64,000 nt of DNA, from NCBI GenBank assembly GCA_964106915.2, contig OZ066914.1, one strand, 5' to 3'. The notes under the pieces were generated by a model that was given only the letters and a program-made list of their open reading frames with translations, did no database searches and was not told the DNA's origin. This DNA comes from Podarcis gaigeae (taxonomy: Eukaryota). The position numbers and the translations under genes were made by a program. The stretch's first letter is position 1, and every line of letters begins with the position of its first letter. Below, in pieces: positions 41,337 to 64,000 of this stretch.

Positions 41337-42369
41337 TCATGCATAGAAAATGAGTTCAGGTATCTGCCCTCCTTGCACCCCAGTGCCGTTGGTACTGTCC
41401 GAGGAGCACTGGAACTGGAACGTCACTTTTCCACACTGTACTTCGGTCATTCCCTCTTGTCCAAAGTAACTCAGCTCATTGCCATCCAGGATGGCGCTCA
41501 CATTGTAAAAGGTGTCTTGCTCAACCTGCACGGGATGCTCGAACCATACTGAGAAAGTGTTACTAGATCCATCAGAGGTAAACTTCGTCAGGTTCTGGGC
41601 AAGAACAGCCCCCAGCCGCTTCAGTTCAATTTTGACGCTGTATTCCGCCTTCCCACAACTCGACCCGTACAATCCCAGTCCGGCTATAAATATCCTTTTA
41701 TCAACAGCAAACTGGATGCTGTCACACCGACCTCGGTACCTCCACTGATTGCTACGGTAGGCGGAGGACTGAAATCGGTGGCACCTCTGGGGTACAAGTC
41801 CTTTCCTCTTGGTTAGCGGAAATTCTAACTTGGGCTTATTGGCAGCAGTATACCACAAGAAAATATTATGCCTTTCCTCCAGCGTTAGGATGTCGGACTG
41901 AGCAGCCCCGTTGGCGAACTCTTCCAGAGTCATGGTTGGGATCCGTACCAAGTACAAAGCTTTCCCCAATACATTCCGCTTGTTCCTTGGCGTAACCGGC
42001 AGCCCTTGCCTTTTGCATTCAGCCTCAGCCCAGTTCAGGACTGCCTCAAACACCACCACCTCCTTCGTGTTCAGGGCTTCCCGCGTCACGATGATCTCTA
42101 GCGTCTGTTGATCTATTTCGCAGAAGCCCTCCGATTTTAGTGCCATCTCAGCCTGAGCATCAATGACTTCCCAGCAGCGCTGCGTCAGCTCCGGCTCCTC
42201 AAAGAGTCTGCTCTGAGACAGCAGAACGCAAGCATTCTTGGCCTCTAGACTGGTCTCCAGAAAATTGACGCAAGCTTTTGCTAATGCTGGGACAATGTAT
42301 TTCTTGGCTGCGTACAGAGTAGCAAGCACAGTGTCTGCTTCCAGGTCGATTTCATCGCTGTACATGTAC
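41337..42369 (-). CDS. BTBD6: BTBD6 last coding exon (end of BTB, BACK and PHR domains)
   Basis: (K)YMYSDEIDLEADTVLATLYAAKKY...GTGVQGGQIPELIFYA*, near-identical to BTBD6. TAG acceptor at 42370-42372; TGA at 41337-41339. Confidence 0.98.
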
Positions 42370-42551
42370 CTATCGATGCAAAAGAAAAAAAGGAGAGAGA
42401 ATAATCCAATTTTTAAAAAGAACAGGCATATGGTTGCAGCTAATCATTTAACATCAACCATCCTTAAAGGCCTTTAAACCCATGTTCCCAAGCTGCTGAA
42501 AGACTGTTGAAAAGCTTTGTTTTCATCCAAGTTATCTTTACTACCACTTAC

Positions 42552-42670
42552 TTTAGTAAGATTAGGAAGGCTGCAGGTTCCACATCTGGTATATGGATTT
42601 CAGATTTGACCTCTGCAAGATCTCCATAAAACATGGCATAGAAGACAGAGCTACCAACTGCCAAAACATA
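42552..42670 (-). CDS. BTBD6: BTBD6 coding exon 3 (BTB domain)
   Basis: [39 protein letters not shown](K). 119 nt. CAG acceptor; GTAAGT donor. Absent from the ORF track. Confidence 0.96.
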
Positions 42671-43016
42671 CTGCATTTAAAAAAAGAAAAAGAAAATCAG
42701 CCATGGTTGTAGACAGCTATATTTAAGTAGGTAGAATTATATAATAATTTCAATTTTAGGAGTATTTCCCCTCCCCATTTAGCTATAATACTTAGAATGT
42801 ACATGAGTGTAAATTTATTTTATCTAGTGTCAGAGAAGATATTATATATTTTATACAACTCCTTAATTGCATTTTGCAAAGATAATATGGGATGACCCTA
42901 TAAATAAGAAAAATTGAGCTGGAGCATGTAGAATGGTACACGGGTCTTTCAATGGAGAACAGAACAAATAGAACCCCATAGCAGGGGAAAAGAAAGCTGA
43001 GTGTCATCCCACAAAC

Positions 43017-43107
43017 CTTGTGAGCAGGAACTTTCTTGGCTGCCCCCACTGGGCCCACAATAAAATGCACATCCGCCATAAGTTCGTTATTGAACATGAG
43101 CGCGTTC
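43017..43107 (-). CDS. BTBD6: BTBD6 coding exon 2 (start of BTB/POZ domain)
   Basis: (R)NALMFNNELMADVHFIVGPVGAAKKVPAHK. 91 nt. ttgcAG acceptor; GTTTGT donor. Confidence 0.96.
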
Positions 43108-43444
43108 CTGCAAGTTTACAGAAAAGGAGGATGCTGTTAAAACCGCAGCTGAGCAGGCAGGCATCACAAGGCTCTTTCCATGCCCTCCTCCTCCCCCATC
43201 TTGGACCCGTTCCAACCATGACTGCCAGTGCCTCCTTCCCTTCTGCTTCCTCGCTGGAAAGGGGCAGGTAGAAGCTCAAATCTGCCCGCCTCCCAAATCT
43301 CTGGAAACATCCCAAACCCTTGAGCGCAACTGGAGTGCCCTTTCTTCCAGACACCCAAACTCCATCCCCCCTTGTTGATATTACACAGCACAAGTTCACG
43401 CCCAGGTTGTTGCTTGCTGCAACCTGCAGCCCGCTGGAGCTTTC

Positions 43445-43644
43445 NNNNNNNNNNNNNNNNNNNNNNNNNNNNNNNNNNNNNNNNNNNNNNNNNNNNNNNN
43501 NNNNNNNNNNNNNNNNNNNNNNNNNNNNNNNNNNNNNNNNNNNNNNNNNNNNNNNNNNNNNNNNNNNNNNNNNNNNNNNNNNNNNNNNNNNNNNNNNNNN
43601 NNNNNNNNNNNNNNNNNNNNNNNNNNNNNNNNNNNNNNNNNNNN
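43445..43644. other. Assembly gap (N run) covering the end of BTBD6 exon 1
   Basis: Run of N. Confidence 1.
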
Positions 43645-43947
43645 GAGGTTTTGCAGCGGCGGCGGCGGCGGGGGCTGCGCGCTCTGCTGGAGCTGAAGGG
43701 CGTTTTTCTTGCTGTTGGCGGCGGCGGCGGCGTTATTGCTGTTGGCGAGGTTGGTGTTGGCGCTGGCAGGGTAAAGTTCCGCAGCCATCTTCTTCTTGAG
43801 GGCCAGGGGCACTATCTCATAGCATGCTGGCCCCTTGCCGCCGGCCCGGACGCTCCTTTTGGACTTCTTTAAGGTCTCTGGAAGCAGAAGAAAGAAAGTC
43901 AAGCACTTCATGATCCGCCCATGGAAGCAACCATGGTCCAGTGGCAT
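43645..43947 (-). CDS. BTBD6: BTBD6 first coding exon (3' end hidden in N gap 43445-43644)
   Basis: ATG at 43947 gives MPLDHGCFHGRIMKCLTFFLLLPETLKKSKRS...CYEIVPLALKKKMAAELYPASANTNLANSN...PPPPPPLQNL. MAAELY (ATG 43788) matches the BTBD6 short-form start; MKCLTFF..LPET and CYEI match the BTBD3/6 long N-terminus. Confidence 0.88.
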
Positions 43948-48072: not shown

Positions 48073-51000
48073 CCAGGGGAGTAGCACCTCCTTACAGTGC
48101 CCTGGTTAGGCTCGGGTGCCCCCCCTTGGGGACAGAGGCTGCTGCAGCAGCAGCCAAGCAGGGGCAGGGGGCAGAAGGTAAACACCCTCTGTGCCCTGTC
48201 CCTCCCCCCCCCGGCGCATGAGTGCCCGCCTGTCAGCAGCGAGGGCAGGGTGAGCACGGAGTGAGTGGGTGGTATTCAATGCTCGTCTTATTTGGAGTAG
48301 ATCCATTGTTGTTACTAGACATGATTAACTTAGGTTCCTTAATTTAAGTGGGTTTACTCTGAGTAGGACTTAGTTGAATATAAGATTTTTAGCGTGAAGA
48401 GGGAATGCTTCCTTAGCTGTGTGCTCACTTGATACTGCAAGGCCCTCTCTGTCCCTTCTTGAGGTGTCCTGCCCCATAATGGAGAACAACTTAGGGATAT
48501 CTACATTCAACTAGAAATGATCCTTGTGGTGGGGGAAGAGACAGGTAATGACCTTCCCTAGACAGATGGCACAGAAATAAAGCAGTTGCACCTATCCACT
48601 TTGTAAGTGCTTGTTGCTTTTGTTCATGTGAACACAAAAAAGTATGTCTTGCTTTTCCATATCATGCACCCCTTTCTGTTGTTGCTATCAGCCTAGAAGA
48701 CAGCTCTTGAGTTTCTGTAAACTTCTGATTACCCCATGTTGCACACTCTTTTGAACCATTTGGATAAACCATATCCACACTTGTATTGAACCCTTTCTAC
48801 AAAATGTTGATATCTCTGATCCAGAACCTACTCAGGACATAGAATCACGAATATACAGAAAATGTTACAAAAGCTTGGGCATAGGTTTGGAAGAAGTCCA
48901 ACATTTAAGTGTGCCTTGAGCTGATGCTTGTTTTGTGATGTCTCTATGGCATTGTTTAGTTATGTTAATCTGAGTTCTTTATTTTCAGGCCTAGTTCAGA
49001 TAAAATGAAAAACCGTGGTTTCCAGCTATGTGAAGAAACTTGTGACGAGCCTTAGGCTCACACATTTCTCCCATTTTGCTTTTACAAGGAGATTAGGAGC
49101 TTCCGCTTCTGTTTTTAAACAAACCAAGTTTCCTGTGATATCTGAACATGGGTGACTGGTTTGTGTTTTAACTGTTTGTTAAATTTGTATCCCACCAAAT
49201 GGTGCAAAAGACTGCGACGGTAAATGAGAATGAAACAGATTAAAACAATGGTTCTGGTTCCTGGCTTGTTCTCACAGATTGTAGTTTAAACAGACCACCA
49301 TCTCCTGAGTTAGAATGTCACAAGGAACTTGGTTTGTCTAAACCTGTGGGTGGGTGCTTTTGATCTCCTTTGGTATGCACAGAACGAGATGGAGTGTGTG
49401 CACTCAAGACTTCATGTAGTAGGAATCCATAGTTCCCCATTACATCTGAACTAGGGCTCAGTCTTACAGCATTACAAAGCAGAACTCTACACACCTTTAT
49501 AACTTCCATAGGATTATTTTTTAAAGAAACTTCTGGCATCACAAGCTAACATGGTACTTGGAAGAAAGTACCTTGTTGTCTGTGGGCCTTGATATTTTCA
49601 TTTAATCTGTTTTGGGAATTGAATTGTTCAGTCTTCAAGGCTTTTAATTTCTTTGGTGAGTTTCACTTTTCTATTAACGCACAGTGCAGACTGGTGTTGT
49701 CAAGGCAGTCTGTAAGCATGAAAGACAAAACAATTTTCTGAAATACCACAATGCATTTGAGGCTCTGTGCAGGGCAGCTTTAGGTAAAAAAGTGATAAAA
49801 AGTCTTTAACCTCATCCCAGGAGATTCTCATCTTGTGACCTGCTAGCTGCCTTCATGTTATCACTGCCAATGCACACGAGAAAGTTTTGTGATTTTCTCT
49901 TTCTCTGTTGCATTGTGAAATGTAACATAGAAATGCAGCCACAAAAATCATATTTATGGTTTGCTTACACCTTTTATATATTAATGAAGTTGTGATGCTT
50001 AAGATTTATAGCATTTGCTTTTACTTGGGATACTAGATTTTCTTGGGGTCTTTAGTTCTTTCAAACAAGTTCATTGATTTACAGCAATTTAACTATAAAT
50101 CTGTATGAACATCATGGATAACTAATGTGCGGATTTCCTCCATGAATCTCTACAACTCAGATAGTGTTAATAATTTACTTGGTATTTTTACTATGATCTA
50201 CTACTGCCTGTACAGAGGTTTTCATGCAGTGTTGCGGACTATGTGTATGTGCGGTCATTTTATTACACAATAAGAATAAACAGAACTCGCTGCATAATGG
50301 GTAAGTGTTAACACTTAGCAGCAAATGAAGCTGATTTCATTAATTATAAGTCCACGAGAACTATTTAAATGAACATTTTCAAGCGAAGCCTCATCCTTAT
50401 CAACGGAAGAACTCAAGCAGGGCATCAACTGAGAAAGCATATTCGCCAACAAATTACCTGGCAGGAAATGAGAAACTGATTCCTCCACAGAAGAGCATAA
50501 ACATATTAAACAAAGGCTTAAAAAAATATATCTGCTGCATTAGAAGTTGACCCCTCAAAAAAGCACTATTTATGTAGCTTTCTTCGTTTGGAACCACAAA
50601 CACCAATATAAAAATGATTTTATTGCGGCGCAATAGTTAGGCATCAAGCTGCATTGCTAAGCACATTAAACTGAGATAAATCGGAAAAACAAGTGGGCTG
50701 GTAAAACCACATGGCTGCATGCTCTAATTGGTTTTCCAAATGAGAATCTGAAAATATTTATGTAAGTTACATATACTGCTTTTCAGGTGGTTTGCTTGCA
50801 TAAAATTATTAAAGCAACATGCATGAATGAAAATTGTATAATAAAGCAGAAAAGCCAAACAACTGTTTGTCACTGGAAAACCTGTATCACTCCTTCAGGA
50901 AAGGGGAAATAAACATAATCTAATCTGTGCCTGGTGGAACATTGATTCTTCTAGCATAAACTTTACAGGCCAGGTGAGCGATTTGTTTTATGGGCCACCT

Positions 51001-51686: not shown

Positions 51687-52604
51687 TATTAATTAAGAAA
51701 TACTATTAAAGATGAGAGTTAAAAATCACAATCTAAATAAGAATATAAAAAAATAAGTGACGAATGCTGGTGGAGGGAAGTCACATAGGTGTAGCATTTA
51801 TGTATGTCTGTATTGTCGGAATTTGAGTTGGTGTAATTGTGTGGTTGTATGTGCATTGTAAATAATAATATAAAAGAGTATGTTTAAATAAAAGTGCGAG
51901 AATAAAAATTGCAGATTTTTTGTTGTTGTTAAGTAAAAACATTTTATGACCTCTTCTCCCCACCCCCTTGATCTATGATATGAGAGAGGAACACTTGAGA
52001 CACGAAAAATTTACAGACAAAATGTTCTGCATGCTTTACGAGAACTTTATTTTCTCCTGTCCCTTCCTGCTCCCAGGTGGTGCTGCCCTCTAGCACACCC
52101 CTGGGCACGCCTCCCCCCTTCCCCAGCATTCTGGCAATATCTTTTACTGCCCTGGTTATTGCATGCACTGTCATATTCTTTACAGCCCACAGCAGTCAGC
52201 AGTTCATGTTATTTCCTTGTGCAGTGCACTAACTTGAAAATCATGGTGGGTTTGGGGTTTTTTTTGGTAGAACATCTGATTTGCATGCAAAAGGTCCCTG
52301 GCTCAATCCCTGACATAGAGCTAGGAGTGCCCCCTGTCCAAAACCCACAACAGTCACTGTCAGTCAATTTAGACAGTGCTCAGCTACATGGCCAATGGTC
52401 TGACTCTATAAAACATCTTTCCATGTCCCTATGTACTTCTTCCGCTGGTATATGTTGTTACCTGTCTGGACTGGAAACGTTGCAGTAGTGTAACCCATTT
52501 TCTGTCAGTGAACTAAGAACTGACAGTAGGCTTTATTGTTCAAGAAGCATGTTCACGAAAGTAAAGGTCAGGATCAGAAATAGCCGACTCTTGTTTTGTT
52601 GCAG

Positions 52605-52754
52605 ATCCATGTTTATATATTCCTCGTTTTGCACACATGCTGGAGTTTGGCGATAAGAACCATGAGGTTTCCATGACTGCCCTCAGGCTCCTGCAGCAGA
52701 TGAAGAGAGACTGGATGCACACAGGGCGACGGCCTTCGGGGCTTTGTGGTGCAG
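52605..52754 (+). CDS. BRF1: BRF1 coding exon (human exon 6 equivalent), second cyclin repeat
   Basis: (D)[49 protein letters not shown], with the GRxP motif. 150 nt. ttgttgcAG acceptor; GTATGG donor. Confidence 0.97.
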
Positions 52755-53000
52755 GTATGGAAGAATTTGTGGGAATTGTTGGGTGCATAGAGCAGCAGCA
52801 GTGGGTTGTGCAGAAGGCGCTTTGCAGGTGACCCCCTGTTCATTTTGTAAGTAGGAAGCAGTTGGTGAATTGACAAGCACAACCTTAGAATCAAGCTGAA
52901 GAAGGTTGGAATTCAACTCCAGGGACTAATCCAAAGAGGTTGGATAGCGCCTAGAATGCCTCCTTCCTGCAACTCCTGCAGCCAAGCTGGTGCCAAACAT

Positions 53001-55155: not shown

Positions 55156-56254
55156 ATTCGATAGGTCTACTCTGAATCTAACTATTGCTGCATAGTGCCC
55201 ATTATGTGTTAGCAGTGCCCTTTTCTTCAGAATTATTGTTTATTCACATGCAAACTTGTACAGATTTTATTGACGTGGGTGACAGCCATTTGAAAAAATG
55301 GCTTTTTTGTTTTTGTTTTTTGTTTGGTCTCTGCTTTTAGTGAATTTTGCTGGGTGACTTTTCAGGTTCTAGAAAAATTGTCCCCCTGTCCATTCCTTTC
55401 TGTACTTTAAAAGCTTCTGTTGTGCTTTCAATTGAACCACAGATAACTCAAGCCCTGGTACAGATTACAGTGGAAGGGAATTTGCCCACAGATCCCAGAT
55501 ATTATACAGCTGGATCAGAAGGCAATCCCATTTTATTTAAGCCAGGGTTCTGCACCTGTTTGTCCTGGACAGATTTATTATTGTAATCTTGACCGTGGCA
55601 TTCCACAACTACAGGTCAAGCATTTTTTGTCATCTTTTATAATCTTTTTTTAGGTTGAGACAGTTTCACTGATTATGTAGATGAGGGACAAATGCAGAAC
55701 ATAAATAACACCCATCTAAACATGTAAATGGGTGCACTTGGGAACCCTGTTGGGCTTGGGATGGATGGACTAAACCTGCTTTCCATCCCCGGGTGATCCT
55801 TGCCATTGAGAATCAAGCCTTCTTCTATCTGCATAGCTCCACCCCTTAATCTGCATAGTCACTTAGCTTCTTCAACGCTACATCATTTTGCTTTAGGCAT
55901 GTCTGATCATGATCATTGGGGTGAGGAATGTGAACTTTGCATCAATGCTGGAGCTCTTTGGCCTTTACCTTGCAGTGTGTGTGCATGTGAGTTTCCAAAA
56001 GAAAAAGAAAAAAGCCCTGTGTTGCATTTATAGAACTCTTTCTGCAGCTGGCTTGATTTTACTGCATGCAAAGTAAGTTTTATAAAATTCCAATTTAATC
56101 ACTCTGTATTCAAGCCCAGAGCTAAACATCAATATTTTAAAATTAATATGAGAATTAGAATTTCAGATGGTACTTGCATGACTCACTGTATTCCCTTGCT
56201 TTCCCCCGCATTGAACTGCCTTTTGATGTAGCCCTTTCCCTGTTTATGCTCTAG

Positions 56255-56348
56255 CTCTTCTAGTTGCGGCAAGAATGCATGATTTTCGGCGCACTGTGAA
56301 AGAAGTCATCAGAGTGGTTAAAGTTGGCGAATCAACACTAAGAAAAAG
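56255..56348 (+). CDS. BRF1: BRF1 coding exon (human exon 7 equivalent)
   Basis: (A)[30 protein letters not shown](R). 94 nt. ctAG acceptor; GTAGGT donor at 56349. The gene continues beyond the window. Confidence 0.96.
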
Positions 56349-56813
56349 GTAGGTCAAGTTTGTGGGGGTCTTCGCATTTTACGTAAGATGCAGCGCAATG
56401 TGTTTACCACGAGGACAGGACTATTTTACATTTCTACAGAACTTTCCACTGATAGGAATATGAATGGTGGTGAGCACCAGGGCCTAGCTTGGGCTGTGAG
56501 GAGTGGCTGTACCCAGATATAGGCTGCGAAGGCCTATTCTTCAATCTAGGTCAGTTGCTGGTCCTGGAGCCTAGATTTGAAGAGCTGAAGTCTTAGCAGG
56601 GAGAAGGTACTGCTCTGTAGGCTAGGCAAGGTTGGAAGGCTTGGTATCCTTTATCTATTGTAGGGGCTTGGATCAGATGACCATTGTGGTCCCTTCCAGC
56701 TCTCCAGCTCTATGATTCTATGAGGCATAGCCAGCTCAGAGGTTTCCTGTTACTCGCCAGTTACTGGTGCCAGTGTTGCTCTCCTAGATGGACAACACAC
56801 TTGACCCTCTGCC

Positions 56814-57014
56814 AGGTTCAAGGTCTGTTGTTGTACCTTACAACATACCCACTTTGAGTTTTCCCTTAGAGAGTGACTCATTTGAAGTTGTCTTACATTG
56901 GAGAACTCTACAGAAGACGAGGCTTGTTGAATTTGCATTCGCCCCAAACTTGTGCCAAACAATTTCCTCACCTTCGTACTTAGTAAGATCTTCAGCTCAA
57001 GCGGGCTGCCAAAG
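56814..57014 (-). pseudogene. Exon-like segment of the RGSL1-like remnant; 3' boundary uncertain
   Basis: tcttctctgtcctaTAG acceptor (phase 2). FGSPLELKILLSTK resembles the RGS-domain P.ELNI motif and recalled RGSL1 PPKLRV. Candidate donor AAG|GTGAGG at 56971. Confidence 0.45.
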
Positions 57015-57425
57015 CTATAGGACAGAGAAGACAAAACATGGGAACTCGGCTGCTCCCACCCATTACCAATGTCTTCAAGGATGAACATGTAGAATTATTG
57101 TGCATGTAGACTTCCCCGTTCATTTACACAAAAAGAGCAGCTCCTTTTTTATTTCCTTTGCACGCAGCTTCCCCCTTCATTGAAGTTAAGGAGGTTGCCT
57201 TTCTGTACTGTGAACTCTGAAACCTCCTATATGATATGTTCAAGGGATTTTGGGATTGGAAAAACTGTTCTAAAATTAGTCATTTCTACAGAGATGTTAA
57301 GGCAAGGATTCCATTGCCTTGCAAGCATTTCATTTAATATGCTGGCAACAAAAATTATTAGGGCTTAGGCTCAGATGCTGTGGACTTCTTTTAAGTAAAA
57401 CCCATGGGATGCATTTGCAACTCAT

Positions 57426-57714
57426 AGGATGGAAGGTGATTCTCCCTGTAGCTTGCTGCCGATAAAAGAAATCTCTTTAAAGCCCAGCATTTGAAATGCT
57501 TCAGAGGTTGAAGCGAACCATACAGTAGCATGCACAAATGAGTCAACTTTATTAAAAAATGCAACGTCATTGATGGGTCTGAATGACAAAGGTGTCGTAT
57601 GATGGAAATTTTCCATGTAATCCCATATGTTTAATTGGCACAGCATTTTTTTAAAAAGGTTTGTAAAAAAAAAGCTTTCCGTTTTAAAAAGTGTTTGTGT
57701 TTTGTCAAGTTCAT
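57426..57714 (-). pseudogene. Exon-like segment of the RGSL1-like remnant (RGS-like helix)
   Basis: Open 289 nt in AT-rich DNA. INDVAFFNKVDSF (57536-57574) vs recalled RGSL1 INDLYFFSEMEKF; EISFIGSKL vs DVILMRSKM. Phase-1 acceptor gtttttgcaAG matches the upstream phase-1 donor. Donor reads ATGAGT. Confidence 0.55.
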
Positions 57715-58932
57715 CTTGCAAAAACACATTATACACTTTTTAATCATTTGCATTAAATAGGAATTCTAAAACCATTGTCTGTACAGTCGAGTGGTATGGA
57801 GCTTGTCATCTTCCCTTAAAAAGCAAATAGCTGCAGAATTATCTCACTGAATTTTTCTATTGCTTATGCTTTCAATAAATGCTAAAATACTTAAGTCTGA
57901 AAAATGACATGAAAATACAGTTTAATATATTGGATGTATTACTGGTAAGCTACTAATTTTTGAGCTGGCAATATATCGTGAATTATGTGTGCGTGTGCGT
58001 GCTGTGTCAAAATCACAATGTGGGAGAAACTGTGAAGCTAGCTGATGCCTCTGTATACCTCCATCTTAATCTCAGATATTGTGATTATATCAGTATATCA
58101 CAATGTTTAGCTGGTGGTATATTGTGATGTTGAAAGCCAGATGTCACCCAACCCTACTTGACACTGTTGTGATTGACAGGTGGCTGGTCCTGCATAGGTG
58201 TCAAACTTGGCCCAGATCTAGTTCGCCATCCCGCTGCTTTATAGCATCAAATGGCGTATCTTTAATTAATTTTTCTTTCTAATCCACTTGATAAATTTCA
58301 GGGCAAATCCTGGCTTCATAGGAACATCATTTGAAAGCCACAATTCTGACTGATTGCTCTTTAGTTGATCAACATACCGATTTAAGCCTGTTTAAAAGCG
58401 CATGGCACTGCGGAGCAGATACTTTGCACGGTTTCCAAATCATTTGGATGGATTATTGGCGCGCAGCCTTCATTTTATTTGAGTGATAGCAAATGTGCTG
58501 AATTGTAGTGGAAGCACATTCATTTGAGCAGTTGTTTAAAATGAAGGAGCGTAACTGCAAAATTCGTGCTTTGAAATGTTTACTCAGGTCATGCATATCA
58601 ACTAAATTGACAGTGTTATTTACTTTGACAAGGTAAACGTGACAGCTGAATTATTTTCAGGGAGCTATAATTACAACTGTATTTATCACAAATCCATAAA
58701 ACATGATTGATGTTTCTCAAATAACCCCACATTATATTGCATTTATCGCAGAGGCATATTCAAAACAAACCTTTTTGAGTAAGTCTTCCTGAGCCCAAGA
58801 TTTTTCCTTCAAGCACTTAGATTCTTGAAATGTCATTAGGTAGAAGTTGGCTGAATTAATAAGTACTTGTTTCACATAACTGTTTAAAAAACACACACAC
58901 ACTGCTTCTTGTGATAGACATTGCTTTTTCAC

Positions 58933-59448
58933 CTGAGGTTTTTCTCAGGGTGAGGTTGGGAGTAGATTTCTTGCCCCTTTCTTTCCATGTCTCTCTTTTT
59001 CTCAGTTCATTGTATCTGAGGAGGACTGCAGTTGAGTGGCAGAGCCCATAATTTGCACTCAAAAGCTCTCAAGTCCAGTCCCTGGCATCTCTGGGTAGGA
59101 CAAGGAAAGAAGTCTGGTAGAGCTGTCTTCCGTCAGTATAGACAAGGAGTTCTTGGTGGACTCCCATCTCCCATGAGCACCAACCAGCATAGTCAATGAT
59201 CAGCTGTGGGGGGAACTGCAGTTCATCTGAAGGGCACTCCATTGCCTACCCCTGATATTGGATACTGGGTTATATGGAACAATGGTCCTATCTTCCAGAA
59301 TCTTCTTGGTCATTAGCTTCTGCCTCCCATCAACTGCATCCAAGTGTCGGAGCTTTATAAAATCATATACACTGGAACTTTGCACACTCGTAACGTGTAT
59401 TGACAGTTTTTGGAGAATGCGTAATTCTTTTGCTTGTTTTCTCCTGTT
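58933..59448 (-). pseudogene. Exon-like segment of the RGSL1-like remnant, interrupted by a SINE and a MITE
   Basis: ccctccAG acceptor at 59449. Reads NRRKQAKELRILQKL...YDFIKLRHLDAVDGRQKL..., then TE sequence (about 59018-59254), then YNELRKRE...LRKTS and CAG|GTGAAA donor at 58932. FIKLRH...RQKL resembles recalled RGSL1 FCKYRR...RQEF. Confidence 0.45.
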
Positions 59449-60164
59449 CTGGAGGGTAAGACTCAAACCAATGGCTCCAAGTTGCGAGAAAGGAGATTCT
59501 GACTAAGCACCAGGAAGAACTGTTTGAAAGTAAGATCTGTTTGACAGTGGAAGGGTCTCCCTTGGGAGCTTGTAGACTCTTCTTCCTTGGAGGTTTATAA
59601 ACAGAGGCTCGATGGCCATCTGGGTGCTTTAATTGAGATTCCTGCATTGTAGGGGGTTGGACTAGATGGCCCTTGGTCTCCCTTCCGACTCTACAATTCT
59701 AGGATTCTAAGATTCTTATACTGAATGACATTTCCTTCGGCTTCACTTTGTAGGGGTGTACAAGTTCATGTACACAGCATGGGTTATTTTTAGGAGTGGA
59801 AGAAGTGATATTCTGGGGGTTTTTTGGCTTTGTGATAGGTCAGGTTCTGATGCTTTTCATGGGCATTGTATTAAACTTTTTTAACAATGAAAGAGAGCAA
59901 GATGAGGGGAGGTTATATTAAGCACTCGGGGTAGGGTGGGGAACATGCAATGTCAGTGGTTAGCGGATATGTGTCAGTCAAGACGGATCTTGAATCAGCT
60001 GTTAAGCAGATGGCTGAGAAGAGGAATTTGGGATCTTACCAAAAGGAAAAGAATGTTTGTTATGAATGGAAGTGCATGGCTTTTTTTGGTATCTGGATAC
60101 AAATTTCATTGGAGAGGCACCAAGAACTGCTTTGCTAAATTAAGTAGAGGCCTGAAATACATAC

Positions 60165-60462
60165 TAGCATAATTTCAAAGTGCTATCATTGGTTGAATGA
60201 CAAGCAGCTTGCTCGCACATTAGGCAAAGATCCAATCTGAATATCTTTCTGATATTTCTTCCAGTAAGTTCACTGATCAACCTCTGTTTTCCTTCCATAG
60301 AGAAAGTGCCATTTTCCCCACAGGATTTTCCTCCAAGCGAGTCTAGCATTTCAGCAAACTATTTACAACAAAGACACTAAGAATTTGCTGGTAGACTTCA
60401 GTACTTTCATTTTCACACTCGCTTAAGCACTTGTCAGCATTGCTGTCGCTTGAGAGTTGCAG
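60165..60462 (-). pseudogene. Degenerate exon-like segment of the same antisense remnant
   Basis: Acceptor ttgtttttgtaCTGACtttgTAG and donor |GTATGT, but stops in all three frames; similarity weak. Confidence 0.3.
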
Positions 60463-61567
60463 CTACAAAGTCAGTACAAAAACAACCCAAAATGTTTTGC
60501 TGTTTCTTCCTTTTGCCCTTAGACTATCATTGATCCATAGATGAGCTGGAAAAATTTTGGGTCCCCGAAGATTTATTTGACATAGTCTGTGACACTTGTA
60601 AGAGGCTTACAAGTTATGTTTGTCTAACTCTGACAGAATCATTGCTGCTTTTGTCTTAAGTTCAAATCTTTACAGCCCCCTTGGCTTGAGGCCAAGCCGT
60701 GCTTAGGTTTCCCCCCTTTACATGTGGCCAAAACCTGGTTTCTTGACTAGCAATATGCTAATCATTGCGATGGGTCAGGGACTGGTATGTAGATGTTGTG
60801 ATGTGAGGATACCTGCATAGTATTACAAGAACTCCTGGGAGGTACAGCACATTTCTGCTCTGAACAGACACACATTGCCTTGCCTTGTCGCATTTCTGTC
60901 ATTGGGGGCCAGCAATCCAGGGTCACAGTTGAAGAGCATGCTTTGGTAGCATCATAACCTGGTCTTAGCCTGTAGAGCATTATCTCATACAAACCTGCCA
61001 GCTCAATAAGGGTCAAATCTGTTACCTGTATCAAAACAACCAGCCTGTTTCTGTCCTCATACCTCCCTTTTTCATCTGCAGGAGATTCTACGCTTCTTTA
61101 CTTTTTGCTGGCCACTTATGAGGGTGTTGTGTTGGAGATAGGGGTTCATGGATGTGGATTCAGACAGCGCTGTCTTCTTTGTATTGGTGAAAAACGAAGC
61201 GCTGATATTCATATCTGGATAAAAGGCAAATTGTTTCTGTTTTACCTGAGGATTTGACCTTTACTTTGAAGGGCTTCAACTACTTGTGGTCTCTTTTAAT
61301 GGGGCAGGTACCTTTTTTGTATAGATGTGGATTTAAAAAAAAAGTTTTGTATTGGTTGTGTTCATTGTCATTGGCTTTTGGGTCCACATTGTAAGTCACT
61401 TTGGATGTCTTTGGTGAGGAAGGTGATTTAATAATGATAATACCAGTGCTGTGGGTGCCAGCACAAAATGACTGCCATGGGCGGCAGCAGCAACAAACAA
61501 ACAAAATGTGATGGTATTCTGTACTTGTGATGCTGTCACAAAAAGCACTGTGTGTGTGTGTATAGTA

Positions 61568-61703
61568 CAGGCTTCCTCAGCCTTGGCCCTCCAGATGTTT
61601 TTGGCCTACAACTCCCATGATCCCTAGCTAGCAGGACCGGTGGTCAGGGATGATGGGAATTGTAGTCTCAAAACATCTGGAGGGCCGAGGTTGAAGAAGC
61701 CTG
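61568..61703. mobile_element. Palindromic hAT MITE (about 135 bp)
   Basis: Fold-back arms ...ccctccagatgttt..ctacaactcccat / atgggaattgtagt..aaacatctggaggg; TSD gtatagta / gtatagca. Relatives at about 626-748, 26840-26977, 31832-32694 (split), 34008-34127 and 59144-59254. Confidence 0.85.
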
Positions 61704-62269
61704 GTATAGCAGGCGATAAGAGAGTTGGATATACGGTAAGTCAACTTAGGCTAGAGCTGAACTGCTATCTGGTGTCAGCCAGCCAGGCAGCTAGGGTGGC
61801 TCCTTTTTGCCACCTGTTCTTTTATTTCATGTGGCAAGGCCACCGTGAGAGTTCATAGGGCAGCCCCCTGGACCCTCCCCACCCTCTTAGGTCACAGTAG
61901 GAACAAGGGCCAGGTGTCGCATCCAGTTTCAGTTGGGGGTGGGGGTCTGTGCTGTCCCTATTCACGCCTGCTTCCAGACTGCTACCTGCCTTTCTGTATG
62001 TACTATGCATGTGTGTGCACAATGAAAATAAATAAAACAGAGAAACTGCTTGGTGAAAGAAACCAGCTATCCCATCTCTTGCTGGCAACAGGTGTCTTGT
62101 TCACTGCTTCCCCCACTACCACCACCAGAACAATCCCAGATCATTTTCTTTCTTGGTTGGTCCCAATACAGGGGTGCAGAATTATCTTGGATAACCAGTT
62201 CTGTAACTTGTAAAGACTGTAACTTTTCAGGAAGTGGAAAAAGGGGCCAATTACATTGAAAAACCTCAC

Positions 62270-62449
62270 CTGAAGATTCAAGGTGAAGCTTGTGATGGTA
62301 TGTAATGCCTTCTTGGAGAACAGTTGGTACTTGAATTCCTGCAGGATAGGTCCTCGTGGCATGAGAGATCCACTAGGCATAGCTTTTGCCGTTTTGTGGC
62401 GTACGGTTGCTATTTCCCCCCAGTCTGAGGAGTGCTTGCAAAGCAGGTG
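62270..62449 (-). pseudogene. Exon-like segment of an RGSL1/RGS22-family gene remnant
   Basis: ttcctggcttctgctcttAG acceptor and CAG|GTGAGG donor. 180 nt, open, phase 0-0: HLLCKHSSDWGEIATVRHKTAKAMPSGSLMPRGPILQEFKYQLFSKKALHTITSFTLNLQ. Resembles recalled RGSL1 QWRKIATEDLKQGGSL...FEELCYKNPKMAIQKIS. Confidence 0.55.
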
Positions 62450-63127
62450 CTAAGAGCAGAAGCCAGGAAATCCCTGCTCCAAGCTTCACATTCGCCTGGA
62501 GCTCATCAAGTGGTGGTTGCAAAGTGATTGTCCTTTCAGCTCCAGCTTCCTGCCAGCAGCAATATGGGGCTGATAATACTGGCCTGCCTCACAAGATTAC
62601 TGCAAGAGTATATGAAGTGCTTTGAACACTTAAAATGTGCTATAAGAATGCAAAGTGTTATTAAGTACGTAGTGTTCATCACACTTGAAGTGAGGAGAGG
62701 GGGGAGAAATTCTTCTAAAAGCAGCATGGTTATTCCCAGGCCAGAGCTGGGAATCATTTCTTGTACTCTATTGATTTGAAAGTATTGGATAAATTTCCCC
62801 CACATTTTTGTGTTTGTGTGTGTGCTAAAAAAAACAACACAACACCCAAAATGTCACTGCCCGAGCTTTGCATGTGTAACATAACATTGCACATTCGTTC
62901 CCAAATATCTCAAGTTAAAGGATCTCAGGTTACAGGCTTGGAAGGGACCTCTACTTTTGACTCTGTAGGCCTTGCTGTCAGTACAGGGCTGGATGACTTA
63001 AACTTGATTGCAATATGGGGGCTATTATGAATACTTACACCAATATTAATTTATTACATTTTTTTTTTTTGAGATGAACGTAAAGCTTGTTCCTGCATTT
63101 TAATTTGACTACTGTTAATGACGTAGT

Positions 63128-63488: not shown

Positions 63489-64000
63489 TTAATGACGTAG
63501 TAGCGTCTTCTATTTTTGTGGAAGAGGGCTTTCTCTGAGGTCTGACCCAGTCATTTATGGAATATTCATTGTATATCTGTAGAACTTTTAAAAATAATTA
63601 TAAGAATTTGTACAAATCGTTTTGTTGCTTTTAGAGCTTGCATTTTTTGTATTTTATCTCATTTTTATTTTGTTATACAGTGCTTTGATAGCTTCAGGCT
63701 GTGCAGCAGTTTATAAATTAGTCAAGTTAATGATAATGATTAAGATCTATAAAGGTCGATTATAAAGGAAATTAAATGCAAGAATTTCCTTGTGATTTCA
63801 CCGTTTATAACCCTGCTATCCATGGGCATATATGTTCCTGCAACTCACGATAACACTTCATACATCTGATTAAAGCTCTTGCCCTATTTAATTGTTAGTC
63901 TAAAGGTGCCACAATGTTCTTTCTTATTTTCGCTGCAGCAGATTAATATGACTGTCCCTCTGGAATTGCATTTCAATGGGCATTTTATGTTGGAAAAAGG

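What the first reader, a model, noticed from the sequence alone, without database searches (positions are those of the whole stretch)
56814..62449. Second nested antisense gene in BRF1: a multi-exon RGSL1/RGS22-family remnant
Seen: a chain of minus-strand segments with splice signals at 62270-62449 (open, strong AG / GTGAGG), 60165-60462, 58933-59448, 57426-57714 and from 57014 downward. The last two junctions are phase-compatible (phase 1, then phase 2). From memory of human RGSL1, motifs recur in the same order: WGEIAT..GSL ~ WRKIAT..GSL; LQEFKYQLFSKKALHTI ~ FEELCYKNPKMAIQKI; FIKLRH..RQKL ~ FCKYRR..RQEF; INDVAFFNKVDSF ~ INDLYFFSEMEKF; EISFIGSKL ~ DVILMRSKM; PLELKI ~ PPKLRV. Spacing is nearly ungapped across the last predicted splice. 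Inference: a divergent RGSL1/RGS22 paralogue in a BRF1 intron. I know of no counterpart at the human BRF1 locus. Its 5' part would lie beyond the right edge of the window.
Basis: partly seen in the sequence, partly recalled or inferred. Interest (0 to 1): 0.85.

Follow-up and report, generated by a model that had tools for sequence, protein, structure and literature searches.

The report
Fossil RGS-like gene inside lizard BRF1
An intron of the lizard BRF1 gene holds, on the opposite strand, the decayed remains of what was probably a gene of the RGSL1/RGS22 type; it makes no protein now, seems to have died before geckos, iguanians and wall lizards split, and its family could not be confirmed by any database search.

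Summary
The segments exist at the stated coordinates and are single-copy, in a BRF1 intron of a lacertid-type lizard. They do not form a working gene: e2 has four stops, e3 is cut by repeats, the e4 donor reads AT, and no spliced RNA was seen. Orthologous DNA from horned lizard and gecko is frameshifted, lacks the splice sites and shows no synonymous bias. Horned lizard shares two e2 stops, so death predates that split. Crocodile and birds keep only a conserved non-coding element between e3 and e4. No search (Pfam, PDB, 1.8 billion representatives, Atlas) found an RGS hit. That comparison rests on remembered RGSL1 sequence. Verdict: probably (about 0.7) an ancient pseudogene of RGSL1/RGS22 type, partly reused as constrained non-coding DNA; family membership is unproven. 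The scan noted this stretch before (s1-711303) and an unchecked similar relic on other DNA of this genome (s1-656187).

The parts
62270..62449 (-). e1: open 60-codon exon-like segment with good acceptor and CAG|GTGAGG donor
   Evidence: single-copy depth; no orthologous outgroup DNA reached it; no database hit
   Evidence: 72% identical to horned lizard, syn/nonsyn 10/28; homologous frame open 73 codons in horned lizard (L016:21979-22197)
   Evidence: 89% identical to horned lizard over 221 nt against about 62-68% in flanks, P about 1e-13; no synonymous bias; 1-nt loss at 60102; frame open 57 codons in horned lizard (L016:21738-21908)
59432..59717 (+).
   Evidence: depth spike; absent from the horned-lizard orthologue, whose flanks join; family name from own knowledge
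59250..59431 (-). surviving core of e3 (FIKLRH..RQKL)
   Evidence: alignable to horned lizard with indels
58933..59249 (-).
58469..58886 (.). conserved non-coding element between e3 and e4, shared by lizards, crocodile and birds; dates this intron segment to before the lizard-bird split
   Evidence: 76-86% identity, frame-breaking indels
57426..57714 (-). e4: first part of a second RGS-like domain; hidden 1-nt loss at about 57608; dead donor ATGAGT
   Evidence: 65% to horned lizard, syn/nonsyn 5/26; faint gecko orthologue, nhmmer E 7.7e-7
56897..57014 (-). e5: strong acceptor, GSPLELKI motif; 3' end uncertain (candidate donor at 56896 reads GC in three related runs)
   Evidence: not alignable in horned lizard or gecko
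56233..56364 (+). host BRF1 exon on the lower-coordinate side of the intron (tblastn limits)
41337..43911 (-). BTBD6, the known nested antisense gene (context)
   Evidence: Pfam BTB/BACK/PHR; orthologues

Best explanation
An ancient pseudogene. A multi-exon gene with several tandem RGS-like domains, of the RGSL1/RGS22 type, once ran antisense through BRF1 introns, as BTBD6 still does. e2 with its extension held one whole RGS-like domain; e4 and e5 held another. It lost function before the lacertid-iguanian split and probably before the gecko split, then decayed by stops, 1-nt indels, loss of splice sites and repeat insertion. It makes no protein. Part of fossil e2 is now held by non-coding constraint. 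Shown: lesions, absence of coding-type selection, shared stops, single-copy state, constraint on 59930-60164. Inferred: that the segments were once exons, their family, and (from RGS22) a former role in motile cilia or sperm rather than as a G-protein GAP.
For: Lesions and dates. In the 94-nt ungapped block 60452-60359 the predicted frame is the only minus frame free of stops in both species. Read by eye, lacertid-gecko indels within e4 keep the frame between two anchors. From memory only: horned-lizard LNVFVLNGFVELLDSQKRK lines up without gaps with RGSL1 LNTQHLEFFREFLKERKAK (start of an RGS domain). About 78 residues on, TLLNLAKQF..RFQ lines up with TLLTLQGHV..DYQ (about 83 in RGSL1). Putting gecko GKIF before lacertid HHTTPLSFRPIND gives the spacing of RGSL1 IFGH..AIND. 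RGS22 carries four divergent RGS domains (PMC13443885).
Against: No significant hit in Pfam, PDB, 1.84 billion representatives, the 5.8-billion set or the Atlas. No codon-position signal. Splice sites not conserved. No trace in crocodile or ten birds where the intron was covered. Helix-moment test negative (combined P 0.28). Both fold models uninformative. The RGSL1 comparison is from memory and made after the fact.
Confidence: 0.7

Rival explanations
1. Chance resemblance. The stretch is ordinary intron plus conserved non-coding elements and repeats; open frames and AG/GT pairs were picked out, and remembered motifs were fitted to them.
Confidence: 0.17
2. A true pseudogene, but of another multi-RGS lineage, or a partial copy of RGSL1 that landed in the intron and never worked, rather than a once-functional separate paralogue.
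For: No living orthologue found; none annotated in the turtle, bird, crocodile, gar or frog loci as far as covered; exons unrecognisable in archosaurs.
Against: The element shared with crocodile and birds lies between e3 and e4, so a recent block insertion is excluded.
Confidence: 0.1
3. A working gene or spliced antisense transcript in this lizard, using e1 and e5 or a shortened frame.
For: e1 and e5 keep good signals; one 154-nt contig of a guessed RNA run lies in e5.
Against: Four stops in e2, AT donor, repeats in e3, no spliced joint and zero depth over e1, e2 and e4 in two guessed-RNA runs; mostly amino-acid-changing differences in close relatives. Tissues are unknown.
Confidence: 0.03

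Closest known systems
RGSL1 (regulator of G-protein signalling protein-like; formerly RGSL1/RGSL2)
   Same: From memory: order and spacing of short motifs across the last two RGS-like domains.
   Different: Known RGSL1 lies beside RGS16/RNASEL (own knowledge), not in BRF1. This copy is broken in all three lizards seen. No alignment to a real RGSL1 sequence could be made.
RGS22, radial-spoke protein with four divergent RGS domains (PMC13443885; PMC11779644, PDB 9FQR)
   Same: Inferred layout of tandem RGS-like helical domains.
   Different: No exon piece or profile matched any RGS chain in the PDB sequence searches; RGS22 is intact and widely conserved; different locus.
BTBD6 nested antisense in BRF1
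   Same: Same host gene and same strand, about 13 kb away.
   Different: BTBD6 is intact and 85-100% conserved from fish to lizards; this relic is dead.
Unitary and duplicated (unprocessed) pseudogenes, some exapted as conserved non-coding elements
   Same: Exon-intron layout kept, shared inactivating changes, neutral decay, one part constrained without synonymous bias.
   Different: The parent gene or living orthologue is not identified, so unitary versus duplicated is open.

Membership tests
RGSL1/RGS22 type | RGS domain detectable by profile (Pfam PF00615 or relatives) | tested here: inconclusive
   No hit for any piece, but each piece holds half a domain or less after some 200 million years of decay, and joined models were not searched.
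RGSL1/RGS22 type | Significant collinear sequence similarity to RGSL1 or RGS22 proteins | tested here: inconclusive
   Blank in PDB searches, representatives (e4) and homologue search (e1; length window excludes full-length proteins). No RGSL1 or RGS22 sequence could be fetched for a direct alignment.
RGSL1/RGS22 type | Several tandem RGS-like domains in one long protein | not testable with these tools
   Two domains inferred from memory; the 5' part lies outside the window.
RGSL1/RGS22 type | Nine-helix RGS fold | tested here: inconclusive
   Models of pieces: pLDDT 50, and one single long helix; Foldseek blank.
RGSL1/RGS22 type | Expression in testis or multiciliated cells | tested here: inconclusive
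   No recorded RNA holder; no spliced contig in two guessed-RNA runs of unknown tissue.
RGSL1 orthologue | Synteny with RGS16/RNASEL | tested here: not met
   Lies inside BRF1 next to BTBD6; RGSL1 synteny is from own knowledge.
Functional nested antisense gene | Intact frame and splice sites under purifying selection | tested here: not met
Unprocessed pseudogene | Inactivating lesions with neutral evolution of former exons | tested here: met
   Stops shared with horned lizard, frameshifts, syn/nonsyn 10/28 and 5/26. That the segments were once exons is inferred.
Unitary pseudogene | Intact syntenic orthologue in another lineage | tested here: inconclusive
   Broken in horned lizard and gecko; not seen in crocodile or birds; turtle and gar loci cover only 3.4 and 2.3 kb of the intron; tuatara, amphibian, coelacanth and shark DNA not reached.
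Transposon-derived sequence | Multi-copy DNA | tested here: not met
   e1, e2, e4 and e5 at single-copy depth; only parts of e3 are repeats.

The most novel reading that the evidence does not exclude
The relic marks an undescribed third vertebrate gene of the RGS22/RGSL1 type (a radial-spoke-like protein), nested in BRF1 and lost in lizards and archosaurs but possibly alive in tuatara, amphibians or lobe-finned fish. One of its RGS exons was reused as a lizard regulatory element, and the unchecked relic at MAP3K13 (s1-656187) may be a fourth family member.
Probability: 0.3. Interest if true: 0.55.

Novelty: new member of a known kind. Interest (0 to 1): 0.32.

Why it matters
If real, it adds a lost member to a small family whose best-known gene, RGS22, was recently shown to be a radial-spoke part of motile cilia and sperm (PMC13443885). 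It would point to a locus where a living orthologue could be sought and date a gene loss in reptiles. The constrained stretch at 59930-60164 would be a case of a dead exon kept for a non-coding job. It shows no new mechanism and has no present protein product.

Tried and rejected
Profile and sequence searches of every exon piece, of horned-lizard and gecko pieces and of two single-exon alignments: blank. Weak chance hits were rejected (alphavirus E1 E 0.12, TBC1D1 E 0.71, Reeler E 0.14, pilin E 0.27). Metagenome scan blank. Rfam hits at 61570-61701 are below gathering score and fall on an inverted-repeat element. Fold models were too poor to search further. I first read the turtle locus as a deletion of the region; that was wrong, the anchor is a repeat present twice in turtle. 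Rhineura and Anolis loci did not reach the intron. A candidate e5 donor at 56896 was rejected as unconstrained (GC in three related runs). Left out under the operators' rules: searching or folding a joined spliced model; reading e2 through its stops; typing remembered RGSL1/RGS22 sequence into any tool, so no score exists for that comparison; N runs were not filled; no human contig was fetched or compared, so the human BRF1 locus was not checked.
Full report
Setting. The window is squamate DNA; its repeats look lacertid to me (own knowledge). BRF1 runs on the + strand, with exons at about 52568-52759 and 56233-56364. BTBD6 is nested on the - strand (Pfam; orthologues; the same nesting in turtle, birds, crocodile, gar and frog). 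The finding lies in the BRF1 intron after 56364.

Observation. The five segments and the quoted lizard peptides are there. e1 is open with good signals, and e5 has a strong acceptor. But e2 has four stops. The e4 donor is ATGAGT. e3 starts inside one repeat, contains another, and changes frame before its donor. Long open frames are in excess on this strand (8 against 1.4-2.9 expected), though other bins reach 5-6, and the GC-rich promoter bin 11. Exon-like AG..GTRAG stretches occur about once per 9 kb, three of them here.

Database tests. Exon by exon, nothing of the RGS family appeared: Pfam, PDB sequences, 1.84 billion representatives for e4, the homologue search for e1, the Atlas and metagenomes. 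The e4 blank argues against an annotated close orthologue. It says little about relatives at about 25% identity, which half-domain pieces would miss. Folding gave nothing usable. Two guessed-RNA runs showed no spliced joint and no cover of e1, e2 or e4; one 154-nt contig lies in e5 and two unspliced contigs lie on the conserved element.

Orthologous DNA. Loci were fetched through BTBD6 and through partial BRF1 proteins. Crocodile and ten birds share only the element at 58469-58886, which lies between e3 and e4; no exon remnant was found in them. Turtle and gar cover too little of the intron. Horned lizard (L016) aligns over e2, e3 and e4. e2 is 72% identical with syn/nonsyn 10/28, e4 65% with 5/26, and neither shows a third-position excess. 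The e2 acceptor, and the e2, e3 and e4 donors, are absent. Two e2 stops are shared. The repeat at 59432-59717 is missing there, so it is a later lacertid insertion. Gecko (L017) keeps a faint, frameshifted orthologue of e4 (E 7.7e-7). Any gene here was therefore dead before the lacertid-iguanian split and probably before the gecko split. The element between e3 and e4 excludes a recent block insertion.

In the predicted frames, horned lizard is open for 73 and 57 codons and gecko for 73. This is partly inherited from shared ancestry, so it is weak alone. In block 60452-60359 that frame is the only minus frame free of stops in both species. The comparisons expose 1-nt losses in the window at about 60359, 60102 and 57608. 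From my memory of RGSL1, which is a lead and not a test: LNVFVLNGFVELLDSQKRK matches the domain start without gaps. Gecko GKIF joined in thought to lacertid HHTTPLSFRPIND gives the RGSL1 spacing before IND. A reference-free helix-moment test was negative, and the composition tests were marginal and confounded by A+T content.

A surprise. The DNA at 59930-60164 is 89% identical between lacertid and horned lizard against about 62-68% in the flanks (P about 1e-13), with indels and no synonymous bias. A second block at 60510-60630 is 86-88%. Part of the fossil exon thus seems to be kept for a non-coding reason, which is unknown.

How it works. Most likely it does nothing as a protein gene (shown). 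It is the remnant of a multi-RGS-domain gene nested antisense in BRF1 (inferred, 0.7). By analogy with RGS22, which has four RGS domains lacking the G-alpha-binding residues and sits in radial spokes (PMC13443885, PMC11779644), the ancestor may have been a cilia or sperm protein; that step is analogy only. Rivals: chance resemblance 0.17, a different lineage or never-working copy 0.10, a live gene 0.03.

Known or new. Paper searches found nothing on such a locus. It is best filed as a new member of a known kind, an unprocessed pseudogene. I do not file it as RGSL1: synteny is not met and the sequence tests are inconclusive.

Left out. Under the operators' rules, the joined spliced model was not searched or folded, e2 was not read through its stops, remembered RGSL1/RGS22 sequence (no reference) was not entered into any tool, N runs were not filled, and no human contig was fetched or compared.

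Noticed in passing
window 58469-58886: Conserved non-coding element shared by lacertid, horned lizard, gecko, crocodile and birds (core nearly invariant). Two guessed-RNA contigs begin within 5 nt of each other at 58596-58601. A possible 45-nt + strand micro-exon (AG at about 58586, GT at about 58632) would be in phase with BRF1, but its acceptor is shifted by one base in archosaurs.
   Followed up: partly
window 59930-60164 and 60510-60630: Blocks 86-91% identical to horned lizard with no synonymous bias; not found in the bird DNA covered. Likely lizard-specific constrained elements on top of the fossil exon.
   Followed up: partly
window 61568-61703: High-copy inverted-repeat element (58-nt arms, 86%) that gives sub-threshold Rfam miRNA matches.
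   Followed up: yes
window 62593-62824 (-): Another open AG..GTGAG exon-like stretch of 232 nt just upstream of e1; no recognisable motif; may be chance.
   Followed up: no
window 63855-63970; L002:911-1011 and 1506-1635: Old repeat fragment shared with turtle, where it occurs twice; it is not an orthology anchor.
   Followed up: yes
window 50306-50613: Small conserved intronic stretch shared with turtle, crocodile, birds and gecko, in the BRF1 intron between BTBD6 and the exon at 52568.
   Followed up: no
other piece of this genome (finding s1-656187): A first-reader note of a possible lost multi-RGS-domain gene antisense within MAP3K13; worth comparing with this relic.
   Followed up: no
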